NCBI GenBank assembly: GCA_038087875.1
Contig: CM075990.1
Location: 17,050,001-17,114,000, forward strand
From: Malacoraja senta
Taxonomy: Eukaryota
Reading direction: 5' to 3'
DNA: 64,000 bases
Shown: positions 1 through 44,520 of the stretch, one piece after another
Layout: each line of letters starts with the position of its first letter
Numbering within the stretch: the stretch's first letter is position 1
Notes under the pieces: generated by a model
Databases searched by the model: none
The model's input: the letters and a program-made list of their open reading frames with translations, nothing else
Told to the model about the DNA's origin: nothing
Made by a program: the position numbers and the translations under genes

Positions 1-1763
1 TGAGTTGTTTCACATTTTATGAAAGGTTCGCAGATAGAACTAAACTGTAAAGTTTGCAACGTTACCTCGGCTCCGGTTGGAGACGGAGTGAAATAAAACA
101 GTACCCAGACCAACAACATCCTAGTCCCGGGTACTGGATGCTGGAGAAACTCAGCGGGTGCAGCAGCATCTATGGAGCCAAGGAAATAGGCAACGTTTCG
201 GGCCGAAACATCCTAGTCTCGACTCAGCGCCGTGTGGACTGAAACTCGCCCCGACCTGAAGGCAGAGAGTTGGAGGGGAGAGAGTGTGTGTGTCCTTGCG
301 AGGCAGCGACTTGCAGGATGTGGGGTTGGACATGCAGGGTGTGTGTGTGTGTGTGTGGGGGGGGGGGGGGTGGGTTTGTGTGTCCCGCCCACAGCAATCT
401 CCGCACACCCACCACCACCACTTCTCACCCACACACACACCCACCACCACTCCACACCCACCCCCCCGGCGACACAGAGACACACTGACATTGCAGCAGC
501 AACTATGCCACAACACGTCCGCGGACTCCCAGCCAGCTCACCGAGTGACTCCTGCCCCTTGTACCCTCGTATCAAAATACAACTGCTGCCTCATGTGTAC
601 GAGGGAACTGCAGATGCAGGGTTACACCGATGATAGACACAAAAAGCTGGAGTAACTCAGCGGGACAGGCGGCATCTCTGGGGAGAAGGAACGGGTGACG
701 TTTCGCGTCTCTGAGAGTCAGGGGAAAGGGAAATTCTAGCAGTTGCGCCACGCCAGGATTTGCGTGGTTCATCATTACTCCTAACCTGATAATATATATG
801 TATCAGTGTTAACCATAATGACTCACAGAGCTGTACAGCACTGTAACAGGCCCTTCGGCCCCCTTTGTCAGTATTTATAAATTCACAAGTCATAGGGAGC
901 AGTCAGGGGACATGGGTTTAAGGTGAAGGGAAAAGATTTAATAGGAATTTGAGGGGTGACTTTTTCACACAAATGGTGATGGGTGCCCCAGGAGGTAGTT
1001 GAGGCTGGAACTATCCCATCGTTTAAGAAACAGTTAGACAGGTACATGGATAGGACAGGTTTGGAGGGATACGGGCCAAATGCGGGCAGGTGGGACTGGT
1101 GTAGCTGGGACATGTAGTCCGGTGGGCAAGTTGGGCTGAAGGGCCAACACTGTATCACTCTATGACTCTAGAAAGGCCATTCAGCCCATCGTGTCTACTC
1201 TGCTATTCAATCATGGCTGATCTATCTTTTCCCTCCGACATTAGCTTAGTTTAGAGTAGTAAATCTTCTTAAATTGTGCCCTGCAATCTCTCACTAGTTT
1301 TTTAAATATTTGCCTGCCAAAATGAACCACTTCACATTTTCCCACTTCATTCTCCATTTGCCAAATCTTTACCTATCGTTTAGCAGTCTTCTTCATGATT
1401 TACTTTCCCACCTTCCTTTGTGCTATCAGCAAGTTTGGCAACCAGGCAGTCTTTGCCCTCATACAAGTCATTTATATAAATTATAAACTGCAGAAGATCT
1501 AACTGGTATGCATGCCTGCAGTGAGTGCACCAGTTGTAACAACTTTCCAACCAGAAAATTAATTTTCAAATTCCTCTGTGGTTTCTTCTGTCCCCAACTC
1601 ATCTTTCACAATTCAACATCTCACCTCTGACTCTGCTCCACCATCTGATCTCTTGCTCATCTCTCTCCATCCTTGCAGCTCCTCACTTCAGTTCTGCAAT
1701 TCCTTCCACCTCGTTTCCCTTAAAACCTACCTCTTAGGTCAGCGTCAAGAAGGGTCTCAACCT

Positions 1764-2020
1764 GAAACGTCACCTATCCATGTTCTCCACAGATGCTGCC
1801 TGACCCGCTGAGTTACTCCAGCACTCTGTGAAACGTCACCTATCCATGTTCTCCACAGATGCTGCCTGACCCGCTGAGTTACTCCAGCACTTTGTGAAAC
1901 GTCACCTATCCATGTTCTCCACAGATGCTGCCTGACCCGCTGAGTTACTCCAGCACTTTGTGAAACGTCACCTATCCATGTTCTCCACAGATGCTGCCTG
2001 ACCCGCTGAGTTACTCCAGC
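1764..2020 (+). repeat. 66-bp tandem repeat (about 4 copies) derived from a Penelope-type terminal repeat
   Basis: Unit starts GAAACGTCACCTATCCATG at 1764, 1830, 1896 and 1962. Confidence 0.9.
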
Positions 2021-4059
2021 TTTTTGTTAATATCTTGTCAAGTTGTTGGTTTTGACTGTTTCTTCTAATGTGACTCATCAATTTGTATTTGTTTTGCTTG
2101 GTTAGAGGTGCTCTGTAAATGCAAGTTGCTGCTCATCCAGGTTCATCTTCAATGCATCTCCTCTTCCACTCCCTGTGGCAGAACTCCATGTTCTCACCTC
2201 AGTGTCCGGGTGACCACCTTCTCAATAGCTTTGACCTTCTGCTCTTTGCCATCACTCTGCTCACCCTATTACAATGTTATAATTTGAAACATTTCCTTGA
2301 GGTCAGCCTCAACCTCCTCTTTTCAATCATTGGTGAAGACAAGAGCACATGGGAGTGCCCACCTACAGGAGGTAGAGAGACCACATTTCAGTCCTTTGTT
2401 GCTTCAGGCTGTGTCAGTGCAGCAGCCACTACAACCTCTATTAAACACTACAACCTCAAAATAGGATCCAAACTATATAGACTTGGGGACATTATGTTTA
2501 ACTTTGCACTATTATTGTCTATTCATTTTTAAAATATATACTGAGCTTTTTCTGAACACCTTCGCTCTGTCCGCCTTAGCCTAAGCCATCTCCCAGCTGC
2601 TACACTTTAACTCCCCTTCTCAGTCCCACACTGACGTTTCTGTCCTGGGCCTGCTCCAGTGTCAGATGTATATCTCATTAATTCCTTCTATGTATCTTTT
2701 CATATCTCTCGGTTCCCTCTCCCCTGACTCTGTCTAAAGAAGCGTCTCAACCCGAAACGTCACCCATTCATTTTGTCCAGAGATGCTGCCTCATCCGCTG
2801 AGTTACTCCAGATATTTGTGTCTATCTTCGGTGTAAGCCAGCTTCTGCAGTTCCTTCCTGCACTGAACTTGCTTGTTGTCATGCGTTTTACATATCTGCA
2901 TTGTTCTGCTTCAAGTAAGAATTTCATTGTTCCGTTTCAGGACTTATGACAATAAAACACTCTTGACTCTTGGGGACCAGAATTAATGTTGGGGACAAAG
3001 ATAATAAAAACTGCAAAAGGGCTGAATATTTAATAAACTTCAGAACAATGTAGAAAACCCTACATGAAACTACCCCACGGGCTCAGATGGAGAGGAAATC
3101 TGTCCAGTCAAACACAAACAAGACTAAAGAGTGCATTTTCCCCACACCTATATATAGTATAGATTCTCATCAAACATCCTGATTTATTTCTGCAGTGGAC
3201 ACTTGCTAATTGCATCCTCTCATTTCAATGCTAAATTCATCCAACACAGGATGGGAGAAAGTCAAGTGCGTTTGAACAACATTTCCAACTTTATTTATGT
3301 ATTTTAATTAAAGTATTTCTACTTGTAGGAGGAGGTGGGTGACCGTGGTGGAGATGGTAGAGCTAGTGCCTGACAGCACCAGAGATCAGGGTCAATCCTG
3401 ACCTCGGGTACTGTCTGTGTGGAGTTTGCACATTGTCACAGTGTTAGAGCTGCCCGTGAATGTTATATACTTTTAAGGGGTCCTGTGGGACGACTGTCTT
3501 ACACAGAGGGTGGTGGGCATTTGGAAAGAGCTGCCAGAGAAAGTGGTAGAGGCAGGTACAATTATGTATAGAAGACATTTGGACTGGTACATGGATAGGA
3601 AAGGTTCAGAGAGAAATGGGTACAATGCAGGCAAATGGGACGTACTCAAGTGGGCATCTTTCTCAGCATGGGACGAGATGGACTGAAGGAACGTTTTCTG
3701 CCCTGAATATTCTGTGACACTATAGATTCGACTGGCTGTGCCCCCGACCAGTTAATGTTCAGTTACGAGCTTACAATTGGGATTATTTCACATGGGCAAT
3801 CAAGAGATTTGAACGCATGGTTCCAGGAACAAATCCTTCAGTTTGCAGGAGTCACAAAAAGTTCCTGTTAGTTCAGAATAATTTTTAAATAAATTAAATT
3901 TTTACATACAGCTGGACCAGGCAACCTGTCCACAGGCGTGAGTTCAAAATAAAATTATGATCCACAAGTTTATTGATAACCCTAAAATGAATGTAAGAGC
4001 AAGATCCTGAGGATGCTCAATGCAAGCTTTGCTTGATGAGCTGTTTAAAAAAAAATAGT

Positions 4060-27228: not shown

Positions 27229-27977
27229 CAGATATATTATTTACCCTGGTTGAGATGAACGATTAAGCAGTGGATTACAAGATTGTTTTCTCTGGGATGC
27301 CGCAGGTTTATCCTCAGCACACAAAAAGGACACAGAGTGCTGGATTAACTCAGCGGGTCAGGCGGCATCTCTGGAGAACATGAACATAGAGTGCTGGAAT
27401 AACTCAGCGGGTCAGGAGGCATCTCTGGAGAACATGGATAGGTGACGTTTTGAGTCAGAAGGGTCCTGATCGAAACATTTATTCAGACCCAAAACGTCAC
27501 CTATCCATGTTCTCCAGCGATGCTGGCTCACGCACTGAGCTACTCCAGCACTTTGTGTTTATATGAGGATTACATCATATATGTGCGTTTTGGTTTATCT
27601 AGCCATTAGATTTTGTATCCTGGTTCGTCTGAGACTAGACTTGGTCCTGAATTTACAGAGCAGCTGGTAGAACAGAATTCAGCGGGAGTGGAGATACGTT
27701 AAAATTGCACAGAATCTGACCTCTGATCTGACTTCTGTATTACAAAATAGATGACGAAACACGTAAAAGTATAAAAAGCTGCCTACTTTTGTACAATTAT
27801 AAACAGAATTAATACGAGATGCTTTTTAGAAATATATAAAATTGTAAGAAATTGTTCTCAATGAAAATAGATCTATATTTAAGACAACATGATCGTCCAG
27901 TCACACATGATGGGTAGTGTATGTCCTTTGCTGGCATGATTTTTAAGTAGGATTTGCAAATAGCTTTAATCCCAGCG

Positions 27978-28122
27978 TTAGTGTTTGCTCCTCTTCATCA
28001 TCAATTGATGGACGTAATCCCACAGTTTACTGGCGTCGGATTCATTGCGGAGAATCATGGTAGCCAATGCTTCAGCTTGGTCAGCGCTCTGCCAGTAATC
28101 TTGCTGCCACATTTGTTTCCAA
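27978..28122 (-). CDS. FUT11: FUT11 coding exon 3 (terminal)
   Basis: poly-T...aacag| acceptor; (S)WKQMWQQDYWQSADQAEALATMILRNESDASKLWDYVHQLMMKRSKH* matches the FUT11 C-terminus; phase fits exon 2; TAA at 27980-27978. Confidence 0.95.
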
Positions 28123-38830: not shown

Positions 38831-39456
38831 CTGTCGTCGTCTGGGATGTCATCGAAGCTTCCATACCCAGGCTCTGGGACGGGGCATCCCAAGTGATTAT
38901 AGGCAGCCATCTTGGGGGCTGGTGGTGGGAATTTATCAGGTTGCTCCTGGTGCGCCTTCTCTGCCCGCAGGCGCTTATTCTCCTGATCGCAAACATAGCA
39001 TTCAAATCCGTTCAAATAGTTGGGCTTGTTAAAGTCATTCACGCCCCACTCCCGCTTCTCCAAACTCTCCACCAGTACAGTGTTGGTGATGCCACCTGGC
39101 TTTTTATACTCCAGATACTTCACGTACTCCTCGTCATTCTGATCCAGGTAATTGATATAGTCTGCCAAGTCTTTGGGAGATTTGAAGTCGTCGATCAGGA
39201 TTACAGAGTGGGAATTGGGCAACCAGTCCTGCACCACAGGGGAACCGCGGTATATCGGCACCACTCCCAAGTGCATGGGCCGCCACAGTTTCTCAGTCAT
39301 GTAGTCATCACAGATCGCATTCTCCATGGCAAGGTGAAACTTGTACGTGCTGATGAATTCCATGAACTCTGGATCTTCTGTGGTCGCTGTCAGAGTGTCC
39401 ACCAGCCGCTGATTGGGCAGCACTTTGTTCTGCAGGCACTGGCCATAGGAGTCAAT
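38831..39456 (-). CDS. FUT11: FUT11 coding exon 2 (alpha-1,3-fucosyltransferase motif)
   Basis: ctccag|[11 protein letters not shown]...[36 protein letters not shown]...GFECYVCD...[10 protein letters not shown]...PDDD; donor AG|GTACGT, phase 2. Confidence 0.97.
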
Positions 39457-42400
39457 CTGGAGGTGAGAGAGAGAAGAACATAAAATTAAACACTGCTCAA
39501 AATCGGTCGTGGTAGAAGCTTAAGGATAGCCAGTTGCGTTACCTGGCCAAAGGCAGATTTTAAGAAAATGTTAATGGCAGGACAGGATAAAAAGAATACT
39601 GCTTATTTTATTTTTATTTTGGATGAGAGATTGAGGACAAGCTGCAATTTAAGGACAAGCAGCAATTTAAATGATGGCATATAACGTGCCACCACATAGT
39701 AACATAAACATGGTAATCAACTCAGCTGCATTATAGGACTCAATTTGCTCACCATTTGAGCAGAAGCCACAGTTAATTTGAAACAATTGACTTTAGTCCT
39801 TTACAAAGCTGCAAACAAAATGACTGTAAATGTCAAAATGTTTCTTTAGATTTTAACCCATTCAGATTCCTAACACAGCAATCAGAAAAGAGGTAGAAAA
39901 TGGGGCAGCCAATTTTTACACAACTAGCTCCCACAAACAAGAACATGATAACCATCAGGGCTACTGAGTGAGGGTCAAATATTGTCGAGAGCATCAGGGA
40001 TAACAACTCTGGCTGTCTTTAAAACCAGTGCCAGAGGTTGAAAACAAGGGGTTCATGAAGAAATAGTTCAGATTCAGAGTAGTTTATTATCACATACACC
40101 AGGGTGCAATGAAATTCCTTGTTCGTATGAAGTTCACCAAGGAAACTGTATATGGTAATGATAGATAAATACAACAATGAATCCAAAACAGCAGAATGGT
40201 GCAAATATTGTCAAGCAATCTAAAGGTGATCGTACTAAAGTACAACAATTGAATAAATGAATGAGCTCGAGTTAAGATTATGTGGCAATATCTCGGCAAG
40301 AGGGTGTGAAAGAGGTGATTGGTTCAGGAGTCTGATAGCCAAAATGGTTGTAGAGTCACAGGGCATGGAAACGGGCTCTTCAGCCCATCTTGACCAACAT
40401 GTCCCATCTACACTAGTCCCACCTGCCTGCGTTTGGCCCATATCCCTCTAAACCTGTCCCACCCATGTACGTTATTTTTTTTTCAGACATCCTGGCTTTC
40501 AAGCTTCCGTTTCTTCTCCAAGAAGGTAGAAGAGAGCAGAAGGAAAGGTGTTTTTGACAATGTTGGTGCCTTCTTCATGCAATGCACCGTGAAGATGGAC
40601 AGGGGAGAAATTTGGAAGAGAGGTGGGGACGGAAAAAGCCTAGCATGCGTTAGGTGGACGAAGGCAATGAGGTACGATGAGGTATCAACTCAACTACAGA
40701 CAAATACACTAACATAAATTAGACATAAAATTCTACAAGAAAGAAGATTGTGCATACAAACAGGACATTATTGCAAAACAACAATTAGAAATAAAACAAG
40801 TCCAGAATGGTGCAGGGGTTGGGCTGAATGTTCTCGTGTCGAGGCAGGAATAGGGGTGCGTGGGTTGAGGTAAGATTAGGGTTGTGTAAGTAAATCAGTA
40901 AAGGAATTTGAAGTTCAAAAGAAACTCTTGACACCATTAATAGTTTCTTCAGCAGCAATAATGTGAGCAATATTTCCAGTGCAATGCTGGGCATCAGCAG
41001 CAGACTGTATCTGTTGTTGGCTCAATTCTGTGACAGTGTTCCTGCTTTCTGCATTCCCATGGACCGACACTGCCCTCTGCTGTAACACTTAGAGCTATAT
41101 TTTGCACTAATCGAAGGCATTTGTTCACTCCTCTTTGTCCCTACTTTGTAAATATACTGGATTGGATTTTGACATTTTAGAAAGATAGAAAATAGGTGCA
41201 GGAGTAAGCCATTCAGCCCTTCGAGCCAGCACCACAATTCAATAAGATCATGACTGATCATCCAGAATCAGTACCCGGTTCCTGCTTTTTCCCCACATCC
41301 CTTGATTCCTTTAGCCCTAAGAGCTAAATCTAGCTCTCTTGAAAACATCCAGAGAATTGGCCTCCACTGCCTTCTATGGCAGAGAATTCCACAGATTCAC
41401 AACCCTCTGGGTGAAGAGGTTTTTCCTCATCTCAGTCCTAAATGGCCTACCCCTTATTAATTTGGGTTAAACTAACATCTGGAGTTGCTTCCTAAACTAA
41501 ACTGAGTAGGAAGGGACTGCAGAGGTTGGTTAAGGTTTCAACCGAAGGTAGACACAAATAGCTGGAGTAACTCAGCGGGACAGGCAGCATCTATGGAGAG
41601 AAGAGCTTTACTCCTGCTTTTTGTGCCTATATTTGGTTCCATAACATCTGGTGCTGAATAAACTGAGGTGAGCCTACCTGTAGGTCCTGAATAAACTGAG
41701 GTAAGCTTACCATCTGGTGCTGAATAAACTGAGGTGAGCTTACCTGTAGGTACTGAATCAATTGAGATTCAAGAGAGTTTATTGTCATGTGTCCCTGATA
41801 GGACAATGAAATTCTTGCTTTGCTTCAGCACAACAGAACATAGTAGGCATCAAAGATTGCTCCTCTAGTATCTTTGGTGGGCGTTGACTACAAAACAGAT
41901 CAGTGTGTCCATATACCATTATATACATATATACACACATGAATAAATAAACTGATGGTAGACAAAAATGCTGGAGAAACTCAGCGGGTGCAGCAGCATC
42001 TATGGAGCGAAGGAAATGGGCAACGTTGCCTATTTCCTTCGCTCCATAGATGCTGCTGCACCCGCTGAGTTTCTCCAGCATTTTTGTCTACCTTCAATTT
42101 TCCAGCATCTGCAGTTCCTTCTTAAATAAATAAATAAACTGATAAAGTGCAAATAACAGATAATGGGCTATTAATGTTCAGAGTTTTGTCCGAGCCAAGT
42201 TTAATAGTAGGTGCTGAATCAACTGAGGTGAGCCTACCTGTAGGTGCTGAATCAACTGAGGTGAGCCTACCTGTAGGTGCTGAATAAATTGAGATTCAAG
42301 ATTCAAGAGAGTTTATTGTCATGTGTCCCTGATAGGACAATGAAATTCTTGCTTTGCTTCAGCACAACAGAACATAGTAGGCATTGACTACAAAACAGAT

Positions 42401-42519
42401 CAGTGTGTCCATATACCATTATATAAATATATACACACATGAATAAATAAACTGATAAAGTGCAAATAACAGATAATGGGGCTATTAATGTTCAGAGTTT
42501 TGTCCGAGCCAAGTTTAAT

Positions 42520-43025
42520 AGTAGGTGCTGAATCAACTGAGGTGAGCCTACCTGTAGGCGCTGAATCAACTGAGGTGAGCCTACCTGTAGGCGCTGAATC
42601 AACTGAGGTGAGCCTACCTGTAGGTGCTGAATCAACTGAGGTGAGCTTACCTTTAGGTGCTGAATCAACTGAGGTGAGCTTACCTTTAGGTGCTGAATCA
42701 ACTGAGGTGAGCTTACCTTTAGTTGCTGAATCAACTGAGGTGAGCCTACCTGTAGGTGCTGAATCAACTGAGGTGAGCCTACCTGTAGGTGCTGAATCAA
42801 CTGAGGTGAGCCTACCTGTAGGTGCTGAATCAACTGAGGTGAGCTTACCTTTAGTTGCTGAATCAACTGAGGTGAGCTTACCTTTAGTTGCTGAATCAAC
42901 TGAGGTGAGCCTACCTGTAGGTGCTGAATCAACTCAGGTGAGCCTACCTGTAGGTGCTGAATAAACTGAGGTGAGCCTACCTGTAGGTGCTGAATCAACT
43001 GAGGTGAGCCTACCTGTAGGTGCTG
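42520..43025 (-). repeat. 33-bp tandem repeat (15 copies) built from the FUT11 exon 1/intron 1 junction
   Basis: Minus-strand unit CAG|GTAGGCTCACCTCAGTTGATTCAGCACCTA or AAG|GTAAGC...; further copies at about 42207-42287 and 41645-41762. Confidence 0.95.
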
Positions 43026-44520
43026 CATGAGCTGCTGGACATAGCGGTCGCGGTCGGCGGCCACCTGGCAGTGTGACTGCAGGTAGAGGACGGGGGCAAG
43101 GCCGCGGCTGCGGGCCTGCTGCTTGTGGCCGAGGGAGAGTGGTGGCGGGCGGCGGAGGTAGGGCAGGCCGGGCAGCCACTGCAGGGAGAGCGGGTAGTCG
43201 GAGTGCCTGCGGAAGGTGGCCGTGTAGTTGAAGAGGCGGATGGCGGCGGCGTGGGCCAGCAGGTAGTTGTTCATGGGCGACTCCTCGTGGAAGAGGGCCC
43301 AGGTCTGGCGGGCGGCCCGCGGCAGCGGAGCCTCGTAGGCGCGGAGCTCGGTCCCGTACACGATGATGGCGGCGGCTCGGCCCCGGTGGCGGCGGCGGCG
43401 GCTCGACACACACGGCCCGGCCCGGCACTCGATGCGCTGCGTGCGGCGGGGAAGGTGCGGGAACAGCTGCCCGCTCCACCACACCAGCAGCGGCGGCTCC
43501 AGCACGGCCACCCCGGGGCTGGAGGCCTCACGCTGGGGCTGAGCATCTACCCCGGGCCCAGGCTCCGCTCCCTCGGCCTCTATCCCGGGCCCAGGCCCCG
43601 CTCCTTCACGCTGGGCCTCGGCCTCTACCCCGGGGCTGGAGGCCTCACGCTGGGGCTGAGCATCTACCCCAGGCCCAGGCCCCGCTCCTTCACGCTGGGC
43701 CTCGGCCTCTACCCCGGGCCCAGGCCCCGCTCCTTCACGCTGGGGCTGGGCCTCCACCCCGGGGCTGGGGCCTTCACGCTGGGGCTGAGCATCTACCCCA
43801 GGCCCAGGCTTCGCTCCTTCACGCTGGGCCTCGGCCTCTACCCCGGGGTTGGGGCCTTCACGCTGGGGCTGAGCATCTACCCCGGGCCCAGGCTCCGCTC
43901 CCTCGGCCTCTATCCCGGGCCCAGGCCCCGCTCCTTCACGCTGGGCCTCGGCCTCTACCCCGGGGCTGGAGGCCTCACGCTGGGGCTGAGCATCTACCCC
44001 AGGCCCAGGCCCCGCTCCTTCACGCTGGGCCTCGGCCTCTACCCCGGGCCCAGGCCCCGCTCCTTCACGCTGGGGCTGGGCCTCCACCCCGGGGCTGGGG
44101 CCTTCACGCTGGGGCTGAGCATCTACCCCAGGCCCAGGCTTCGCTCCTTCACGCTGGGCCTCGGCCTCTACCCCGGGGGTTGGGGCCTTCACGCTGGGGC
44201 TGAGCATCTACCCCAGGCCCAGGCTCCGCTCCCTCGGCCTCTACCCCGGGGCCCTCACGCTGGGGCTGGGCCTCGGCCTCTCGCTGGACCTCTCCCCCGA
44301 CTCCGGTCTCCGCTCCCCGCCCGCCCTCACGCTGGGCCCCGGTCACCTCCCCCTCGGCCCCCGCCGCCGCCGCCACCGCCACCCCGAACTGGAACTGTGT
44401 CAGCGCGGACGCGGGCTGGAACACTCCGGCCTCTCCCCGGGCCTCGGCCTCTCCCGTAGCCCCGGCCGCCGCCAGCAGCAGGAGGAGCGGCCACAGCAGC
44501 AGCAGCACCGCCGCCGCCAT
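43014..44520 (-). CDS. FUT11: FUT11 (GT10 fucosyltransferase 11 / POFUT4) coding exon 1, with expanded repeat stem and one apparent +1 frameshift near 44175-44179
   Basis: ATG at 44520, hydrophobic N-terminus [20 protein letters not shown]; then the FUT11 core PLLVWWS...[17 protein letters not shown]...[22 protein letters not shown]...[24 protein letters not shown]; donor CAG|GTAGGC. Exon is 1507 nt, i.e. 502 codons after removing one extra base. Confidence 0.93.

What the first reader, a model, noticed from the sequence alone, without database searches (positions are those of the whole stretch)
42520..43025. FUT11 exon-1 splice donor amplified into a ladder of 15 in-frame 5' splice sites
Seen: the 33-bp unit spans the exon/intron junction itself, so each copy recreates a GT donor. 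Ten read CAG|GTAGGC and five read AAG|GTAAGC (units 5, 6, 10, 11, 12). The unit is exactly 11 codons and stop-free ([11 protein letters not shown] / [11 protein letters not shown]), and every donor is in the same phase 0 as the exon-2 acceptor. Established: GTAAG matches U1 snRNA better than GTAGG. Inference: several downstream copies may outcompete the ancestral donor at 43014. That would give a quantised series of isoforms with 0-14 extra 11-aa units inserted in the catalytic domain just before the IDSYG motif, with no premature stop. Array length polymorphism could then tune the amount of active enzyme.
Basis: partly seen in the sequence, partly recalled or inferred. Interest (0 to 1): 0.8.

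Follow-up and report, generated by a model that had tools for sequence, protein, structure and literature searches.

The report
Splice-donor minisatellite in skate FUT11 intron
A 33-base repeat that copies the first splice donor of a skate fucosyltransferase gene 15 times is real and shared with another skate, but it belongs to a known class of repeat in which normally only the first donor is used, and nothing here shows that the extra donors make protein variants.

Summary
On the minus strand, FUT11/POFUT4 exon 1 ends at 43014. A 33-bp array (43013-42519) follows, and each of its 15 units starts with GT. Ten read CAG|GTAGGC and five read AAG|GTAAGC. All are in phase 0 with exon 2 (39456), and the frame has no stop.

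The array is not an assembly artefact. Amblyraja radiata has the same array at the same junction, with 11 units.

The isoform-ladder reading is not supported:
- The A. radiata array has in-frame TAG codons and degraded donors.
- Variants among units are all non-synonymous or stop.
- The annotated A. radiata protein uses the first donor, even though that donor is weaker than later ones.
- No database protein contains the unit.
- The catalytic exons are under purifying selection (dN/dS 0.14).
- By U1 duplex energy, the GTAAGC units are no stronger than the GTAGGC units.

This is a new member of a known kind: a minisatellite whose first monomer spans an exon-intron boundary. Human examples are F7, LMNB2 and PDGF, where only the authentic donor is used, and IFI6 and CBS, where two more are also used. 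Usage in skates remains untested because no transcript data were reachable.

Side finding: sawfish and cow shark carry different minisatellites at the same junction.

The parts
43014..44520 (-). FUT11/POFUT4 exon 1 coding part: signal peptide ATG at 44520, Gly/Pro/Glu/Ala stem minisatellite, then the N-terminal GT10 domain ending ..[10 protein letters not shown] at 43014
   Evidence: PF17039 hit; alignment to A. radiata FUT11 P0001; ATG and frames. A 1-nt C-run difference near 44176-44180 puts the ATG out of frame with the catalytic ORF.
43008..43016 (-). Authentic (most upstream) 5' splice site, CAG|GTAGGC, with the cut between 43014 and 43013
   Evidence: Gives HLQ|IDSYG as in all elasmobranch orthologues; U1 duplex -10.7 kcal/mol.
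42519..43013 (-). 33-bp minisatellite of 15 units, each starting with a GT donor copy in phase 0; the last unit is truncated by retroposon X1
43014..43037 (-). Last 24 nt of exon 1, the founder copy of the 3' part of the repeat unit (19 of 24 identical to the unit)
   Evidence: read directly from the sequence.
42287..42520 (-). X1: 5'-truncated retroposon tail inserted in a repeat unit, with a (CTTGAAT)n-type tail; ends uncertain by a few nt
   Evidence: a dispersed copy lies at L001:15924-16156.
42205..42293 (-). Second block of 2.6 units, with donor copies at 42270 and 42237
41763..42206 (-). X2: second copy of the same retroposon fragment, carrying a nested palindromic MITE (about 42129-41957) and a 34-bp insert; orthologous to the single X of A. 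radiata
41650..41766 (-). Third block of 3.5 diverged units (83% matches), with donor-like copies at 41743, 41710 and 41677
38831..39456 (-). Exon 2 (IDSYGQC...IPDDD + AG), C-terminal GT10 domain; the acceptor has a strong pyrimidine tract
   Evidence: PF00852 hit; 95% identical to P0001.
27978..28122 (-). Exon 3 coding part (S)WKQMWQQ...KRSKH plus the stop codon

Best explanation
This is an intronic minisatellite. It arose when a 33-bp piece spanning the last 24 nt of FUT11/POFUT4 exon 1 and the first 9 nt of intron 1 was duplicated in tandem in an ancestor of skates. It has since grown and shrunk by unequal exchange. Each unit therefore carries a full copy of the 5' splice site. The most upstream donor (cut at 43014|43013) produces the conserved enzyme. 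The 14 downstream in-frame copies are most likely silent or minor pseudo-sites, as in the human F7 intron-7 VNTR. The open frame and the period of 11 codons are by-products of copying an in-frame exon tail, not selected features. Shown: the anatomy, the age, the lack of coding constraint, and purifying selection on the canonical protein. Inferred: which donor the spliceosome uses.
For: - The same array sits at the same junction in A. radiata: 11.2 units at L001 3210-3579. Flanking intron is 93-94% identical and dS is 0.088. So the array predates the species split and is not an artefact.
- Copy number differs (15 vs 11). Variant units sit in adjacent runs (units 4-5, 5-6, 10-12, 13-14). Retroposon X is present twice in the window and once in A. 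radiata. X1 lacks the MITE that X2 and the A. radiata X share. All of this points to unequal exchange.
- The A. radiata array has in-frame TAG in units 5 and 6, and weakened donors GTAGAC, GTAACC and GTACGC.
- Across both species there are 15 distinct unit variants: 14 non-synonymous, 1 stop and 0 synonymous, against 24% synonymous expected.
- The canonical catalytic exons have dN/dS 0.14 over 418 codons.
- All elasmobranch FUT11 proteins retrieved read HL[QE]|IDSYG or YIQ|IDSYG. This includes A. radiata, where the first donor is the weakest of the first five.
- No protein among 5.8 billion contains the unit.
- Precedent (PMC1557585): in F7, LMNB2 and PDGF only the authentic site is used; in IFI6 and CBS the authentic site plus two pseudo-sites are used; F7 pseudo-sites raised to consensus value 91 still do not compete.
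- Ten units carry UAGG inside GUAGGC. UAGG is an exonic silencer motif acting through hnRNP A1 (PMC1079783). It would lie inside any extended exon. That this matters here is inference.
Against: - No transcript evidence of any kind was reachable, so first-donor usage is inferred.
- The A. radiata gene model may rest on protein homology rather than RNA-seq.
- The donors here (8 of 9 positions paired with U1) are much stronger than those of F7 (consensus value 74). The F7 rule was established in mammalian cells for an internal exon, not for a long first exon in a skate.
- In IFI6 and CBS the second and third copies are used.
- Classical in vitro work (own knowledge: Reed and Maniatis 1986; Eperon et al. 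1993) found that with two strong duplicated sites the one nearer the 3' splice site can win.
- In the window all 14 alternatives are in frame, so nonsense-mediated decay would not hide them.
Confidence: 0.7

Rival explanations
1. Some downstream donor copies are used at appreciable levels. This gives in-frame FUT11 isoforms with one or more extra 11-residue units between the helix ..[11 protein letters not shown] and the strand IDSYG. Array length would then affect how much canonical enzyme is made.
For: - All 15 donors are strong and in phase, and there is no stop in the window's array.
- The insertion point is a short helix-to-strand loop in the model, with local pLDDT 71-88. Such loops lie away from the nucleotide-sugar site in Rossmann-type folds (own knowledge), so one unit might be tolerated.
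Against: - A. radiata has in-frame stops and degraded donors in the same array.
- There is no synonymous excess among unit variants.
- There is purifying selection on the canonical protein.
- No protein with the unit is in the databases.
- The GTAAGC units are not stronger by duplex energy.
- The F7 experiments argue against competition.
Confidence: 0.2
2. The reiterated donor-like motifs are themselves useful. A cluster of U1 snRNP (and hnRNP A1) binding sites at the start of the first intron would help define the long GC-rich first exon or suppress premature cleavage in intron 1. That would explain why elasmobranchs keep a minisatellite with donor-like motifs at this junction.
For: - Pristis pectinata has a 66-bp array of about 27 copies starting 7 nt after the same donor, with 27 AG|GTR motifs.
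- Heptranchias perlo has a 33-bp G-rich array of about 24 copies starting 4 nt after it, with 19 G|GTRAG motifs.
- Zebrafish has none.
- Arrays are rare elsewhere in these loci: 2 to 5 per roughly 20 kb.
Against: - Only four elasmobranch genomes were sampled and there are no functional data.
- The shared 16-mer near +20 fits simple common descent of an unstable GC-rich sequence.
- The skate unit is unrelated in sequence to the other two arrays.
- Donor copies in A. radiata decay freely.
Confidence: 0.08
3. The array is an assembly artefact: a collapsed or expanded repeat, or a chimeric join.
For: Repeats are error-prone in assemblies. The same exon 1 shows a suspicious 1-nt homopolymer difference.
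Against: An independent assembly of another species has the same array at the same place, with the same retroposon junction. The exact copy number could still be off.
Confidence: 0.02

Closest known systems
Human F7 intron-7 37-bp VNTR (Borensztajn et al. 2006, PMC1557585)
   Same: A minisatellite whose first monomer spans the exon-intron boundary, so the authentic donor is followed by identical pseudo-donors. Copy number is variable.
   Different: - The F7 unit is 37 bp (not a multiple of 3) and contains only 4 exon nt; here it is 33 bp with 24 exon-derived nt and is in frame.
- F7 donors are weak (consensus value 74); here they pair with U1 at 8 of 9 positions.
- F7 concerns an internal exon; here it is a roughly 1.5-kb first exon.
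- Usage is proven in F7 (first site only) and untested here.
Human IFI6 (6-16) exon-2 donor minisatellite, as summarised in PMC1557585
   Same: The donor is reiterated by a minisatellite (authentic site plus 25 pseudo-sites). Alternative use would add whole units to the mRNA.
   Different: In IFI6 the authentic site and the two nearest pseudo-sites are shown to be used. Here no transcript data exist, and the sister species' array is not kept open.
Human CBS intron-13, LMNB2 and PDGF minisatellites at exon-intron boundaries, as listed in PMC1557585
   Same: The same architecture, with 10-20 repeats. CBS uses two pseudo-sites; LMNB2 and PDGF use only the authentic site.
   Different: Different genes and unit lengths (81-100 bp for PDGF and LMNB2). 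All are mammalian, and none is reported as shared between genera.

Membership tests
Minisatellite with first monomer spanning an exon-intron boundary (F7 IVS7 type) | Head-to-tail array of units of roughly 10-100 bp | tested here: met
   33 bp x 15.3 copies, 96% matches.
Minisatellite with first monomer spanning an exon-intron boundary (F7 IVS7 type) | The first monomer contains the end of the exon and the start of the intron | tested here: met
   The exon end at 43014 is fixed by the orthologous protein. The exon's last 24 nt match the unit at 19 of 24 positions, and TRF extends the array to 43025.
Minisatellite with first monomer spanning an exon-intron boundary (F7 IVS7 type) | The authentic donor sequence is reiterated in the following monomers | tested here: met
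   Nine further exact copies of CAG|GTAGGC and five AAG|GTAAGC.
Minisatellite with first monomer spanning an exon-intron boundary (F7 IVS7 type) | Copy number varies | tested here: inconclusive
   15 units here against 11 in A. radiata. Variation within a species is not testable with these tools.
Minisatellite with first monomer spanning an exon-intron boundary (F7 IVS7 type) | Only the most upstream donor (or the first few) is used in vivo | not testable with these tools
   No skate transcript fragments were found in three protein searches. Only the annotated A. radiata model uses the first donor.
Functional in-frame alternative-donor ladder (IFI6 type) | mRNAs or proteins that contain extra units | tested here: not met
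   No database protein carries the unit. This is weak evidence, because skate transcripts are missing from the collection.
Functional in-frame alternative-donor ladder (IFI6 type) | Reading frame and donor quality conserved between species | tested here: not met
   A. radiata units 5 and 6 end in TAG, and several donors are weakened. There are 0 synonymous variants among 15.
GT10 fucosyltransferase FUT11 / POFUT4 | Glyco_tran_10_N plus Glyco_transf_10 domains | tested here: met
   PF17039 in exon 1 (E 2.5e-12) and PF00852 in exon 2 (E 1.5e-29).
GT10 fucosyltransferase FUT11 / POFUT4 | Orthology to FUT11 rather than FUT10 or the Lewis-type FUTs | tested here: met
   All top hits are named FUT11 or POFUT4. 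Exons 2 and 3 are 95-98% identical to A. radiata FUT11. The function assignment comes from PMC11949838.

The most novel reading that the evidence does not exclude
Skates really do use several of the 15 in-frame donors, giving POFUT4 isoforms with one or more 11-residue inserts. Or, more broadly, the minisatellites with donor-like motifs that sit at the exon-1 donor of FUT11 in skates, sawfish and cow shark are kept because a cluster of U1-binding sites helps process this long GC-rich first exon and intron.
Probability: 0.15. Interest if true: 0.55.

Novelty: new member of a known kind. Interest (0 to 1): 0.3.

Why it matters
As it stands, this is a clean non-mammalian example of a known curiosity: an exon-intron junction turned into a minisatellite. 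Its value is as a natural experiment on 5' splice-site choice. It offers 15 strong, nearly identical, in-frame donors in the window. In a sister species the first donor is weaker than later ones and the frame is broken. A few RNA-seq junction counts in the two skates would show whether the 'most upstream site wins' rule found for human F7 also holds in cartilaginous fish and for first exons. It has no evident bearing on POFUT4 enzymology unless the isoforms are found.

Tried and rejected
- Transcript evidence. Three protein-database searches were aimed at proteins or transcript fragments carrying the unit or the junction. They returned no skate fragments, so the direct test failed.
- Genomic loci of further elasmobranchs. 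Mobula, Narcine, Heterodontus and Stegostoma were not on record. Scyliorhinus, Mustelus and Hemiscyllium files were too large.
- RNA structure. The first 197 nt of the array does not fold better than shuffles (z -1.83), so structural masking of the donors is not indicated.
- Pfam hits to the translated array (DciA, IF2_N and others). None has a stretch that passes on its own. They were rejected as repeat-driven noise.
- Pseudogene idea, prompted by the frame break in exon 1. Rejected because dN/dS is 0.14.
- Independent insertion of X1 and X2. Rejected because both share the same 5' truncation point.
- Shapiro-Senapathy or MaxEnt scores. They could not be computed because the tables are not available offline. 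The consensus-value increments quoted in PMC1557585 are not additive enough to reuse.
- AlphaFold model. It is poor overall (pLDDT 55.7) and was used only for local secondary structure at the junction.

Full report
**What is there.** The minus strand of the window carries a three-exon FUT11/POFUT4 gene.
- Exon 1 runs from the ATG at 44520 to 43014.
- Exon 2 is 39456-38831.
- The coding part of exon 3 is 28122-27978.

Exon 1 holds the N-terminal GT10 domain (PF17039) and exon 2 the C-terminal one (PF00852). All best database hits are FUT11, now named GDP-fucose protein O-fucosyltransferase 4 (function in PMC11949838). The nearest is Amblyraja radiata FUT11 (P0001), which reads ..[14 protein letters not shown]|IDSYGQC.. 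across the exon 1-2 junction. Intron 1 is 3,557 nt.

**Checking the observation.**
- TRF finds a 33-bp array at 42521-43025, with 15.3 copies and 96% matches.
- The unit occurs 17 times at up to 3 mismatches, against 0 expected.
- In the register that starts at the authentic GT, there are 15 units, all beginning with GT. Ten read CAG|GTAGGC. Five read AAG|GTAAGC (units 5, 6, 10, 11, 12).
- All are stop-free in the exon frame.
- The last 24 nt of exon 1 match the 3' 24 nt of the unit at 19 of 24 positions (QQLMQHLQ against PQLIQHLQ).

So the unit is a copy of positions -24 to +9 around the junction.

**The wider structure.** The array is part of something larger.
- Unit 15 is interrupted by a 5'-truncated retroposon tail, X1. 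A dispersed copy of this element lies at L001:15924-16156.
- Next come 2.6 more units, then a second copy, X2. X2 carries a nested palindromic MITE and a 34-bp insert. After X2 come 3.5 diverged units.
- X1 and X2 share the same truncation point, so they descend from a single insertion.

**Age and dynamics.** The A. radiata locus (L001) has the same array at the same junction. It has 11.2 units at 92% matches. These are followed by a single X, which has the MITE, and 1.5 further units.

Unique intron sequence is 93-94% identical between the two species, and dS in the catalytic exons is 0.088. The order of events was therefore: array, then X insertion, then X duplication, then MITE insertion, then the species split. 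A. radiata later lost the X1 block. Copy numbers differ, and variant units sit in adjacent runs. This is the behaviour of a minisatellite evolving by unequal exchange, and it rules out an assembly artefact.

**Is the coding potential or the donor set under selection?** No.
- A. radiata units 5 and 6 end in TAG in the exon frame. Several of its donors are weakened (GTAGAC three times, GTAACC, and the first one GTACGC).
- Across both species there are 15 distinct unit variants: 14 non-synonymous, 1 stop and none synonymous. Random change would give 24% synonymous.
- Only 6 of 99 single changes to the unit create a stop. An open frame over 15 young copies is therefore the expected outcome, not a signal.
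- The 33-nt period keeps the copied exon tail in frame automatically.
- In contrast, the canonical catalytic exons show dN/dS 0.14 over 418 codons. The enzyme made from the first donor is the selected product in both lineages.

**Donor strength.** Pairing to the 5' end of U1 (sequence from my own knowledge) gives 8 of 9 positions for CAG|GTAGGC: seven Watson-Crick pairs and one G-U wobble, -10.7 kcal/mol. AAG|GTAAGC gives seven contiguous Watson-Crick pairs, -9.5 kcal/mol. The gain at +4 is offset by the loss at -3. The two changes always occur together, which fits one mutated unit that was later amplified. A frequency-matrix score would probably still favour +4A, but I could not compute MaxEnt or Shapiro-Senapathy values.

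In A. radiata the annotated first donor is the weakest of the first five (-7.1 against -10.7), yet the gene model uses it.

**How it most likely works.** The architecture is a described class (PMC1557585).
- In human F7 intron 7, the first monomer of a 37-bp VNTR spans the exon-intron boundary. Only the most upstream donor is used, and the pseudo-sites are functional but silent.
- Raising pseudo-site strength to consensus value 91 does not make them compete. Only a perfect consensus does.
- The same paper lists LMNB2 and PDGF (authentic site only) and IFI6 and CBS (authentic site plus two pseudo-sites).

By analogy, the donor at 43014 should dominate, with at most minor use of the next one or two copies.

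One possible contributor, which is inference: ten units contain UAGG within GUAGGC. UAGG is an exonic silencer motif acting through hnRNP A1 (PMC1079783). It would sit inside any extended exon.

The array RNA is not unusually structured (z -1.83).

If an extra unit were included, it would fall in a four-residue loop between a helix and the IDSY strand of the C-terminal Rossmann-type domain. The AlphaFold model is poor overall (pLDDT 55.7), but local pLDDT there is 71-88.

**What could not be done.** No transcript data were reachable. Three database searches found neither a protein with the unit nor any skate transcript fragment. Donor usage is therefore inferred from comparative data and precedent, and I leave about 20% for measurable use of downstream donors.

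**Side finding.** Pristis pectinata and Heptranchias perlo carry different minisatellites beginning 7 and 4 nt after the same donor.
- Pristis: 66 bp, about 27 copies.
- Heptranchias: 33 bp, about 24 copies, G-rich.
- Both are full of donor-like motifs, and both have in-frame stops after 15-16 codons.
- Both share a 16-mer with a GC-box-like core about 20 nt into the intron.
- Zebrafish has no array.

The start of FUT11 intron 1 thus seems to be a long-lived or recurrent minisatellite site in elasmobranchs. Whether this reflects descent, local instability or function is open.

**Verdict.** This is a real, old, neatly structured feature. It is a new member of a known kind. The isoform-ladder and enzyme-tuning interpretation is unsupported, though not excluded.

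Noticed in passing
window 44150-44210 (minus strand): The signal-peptide ORF (ATG 44520) ends at a TGA at 44151, while the catalytic ORF opens at 44207 in another frame. The cause is a single extra C in a C-run near 44176-44180: C5 here against C4 in the copy 330 bp downstream. With dN/dS 0.14 downstream, a homopolymer assembly error is more likely than a real frameshift.
   Followed up: partly
window 43510-44250; L001 2260-2725: A coding Gly/Pro/Glu/Ala minisatellite in the FUT11 stem region (45-bp sub-unit; 330-bp higher-order unit x 2.2 at 98%). It is also present, with a different arrangement, in A. radiata, whose protein is 611 aa against about 470 aa in other elasmobranchs.
   Followed up: partly
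L002 1137-2979 (Pristis pectinata); L003 1158-1973 (Heptranchias perlo): Unrelated minisatellites (66 bp x about 27; 33 bp x about 24, G-rich) start 7 and 4 nt after the orthologous exon-1 donor. They contain many donor-like motifs and share a 16-mer with a GC-box-like core about 20 nt into the intron. Zebrafish (L004) has none.
   Followed up: partly
window 42287-42520 and 41763-42206; L001 3580-3985 and 15924-16156: A retroposon tail fragment X is duplicated within the array. The copy orthologous to the A. radiata X carries a nested palindromic MITE (window about 41957-42129, with another copy at L001 11165-11353) and a 34-bp insert. The other copy lacks both.
   Followed up: yes
window 42519-43013, plus strand: Read on the plus strand, the unit is also open in one frame ([11 protein letters not shown]) and contains GAG|GTGAGC, a donor-like motif. 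I did not look for a plus-strand gene here (no ORF or gene search was run on that strand).
   Followed up: no
window 1763-2027; L001 17954-18134: A 66-bp tandem repeat (4 copies at 98% in the window) recurs near the A. radiata FUT11 locus. It looks like an amplified piece of a SINE-like interspersed element that also occurs at 27330-27436 and inside the MITE.
   Followed up: no
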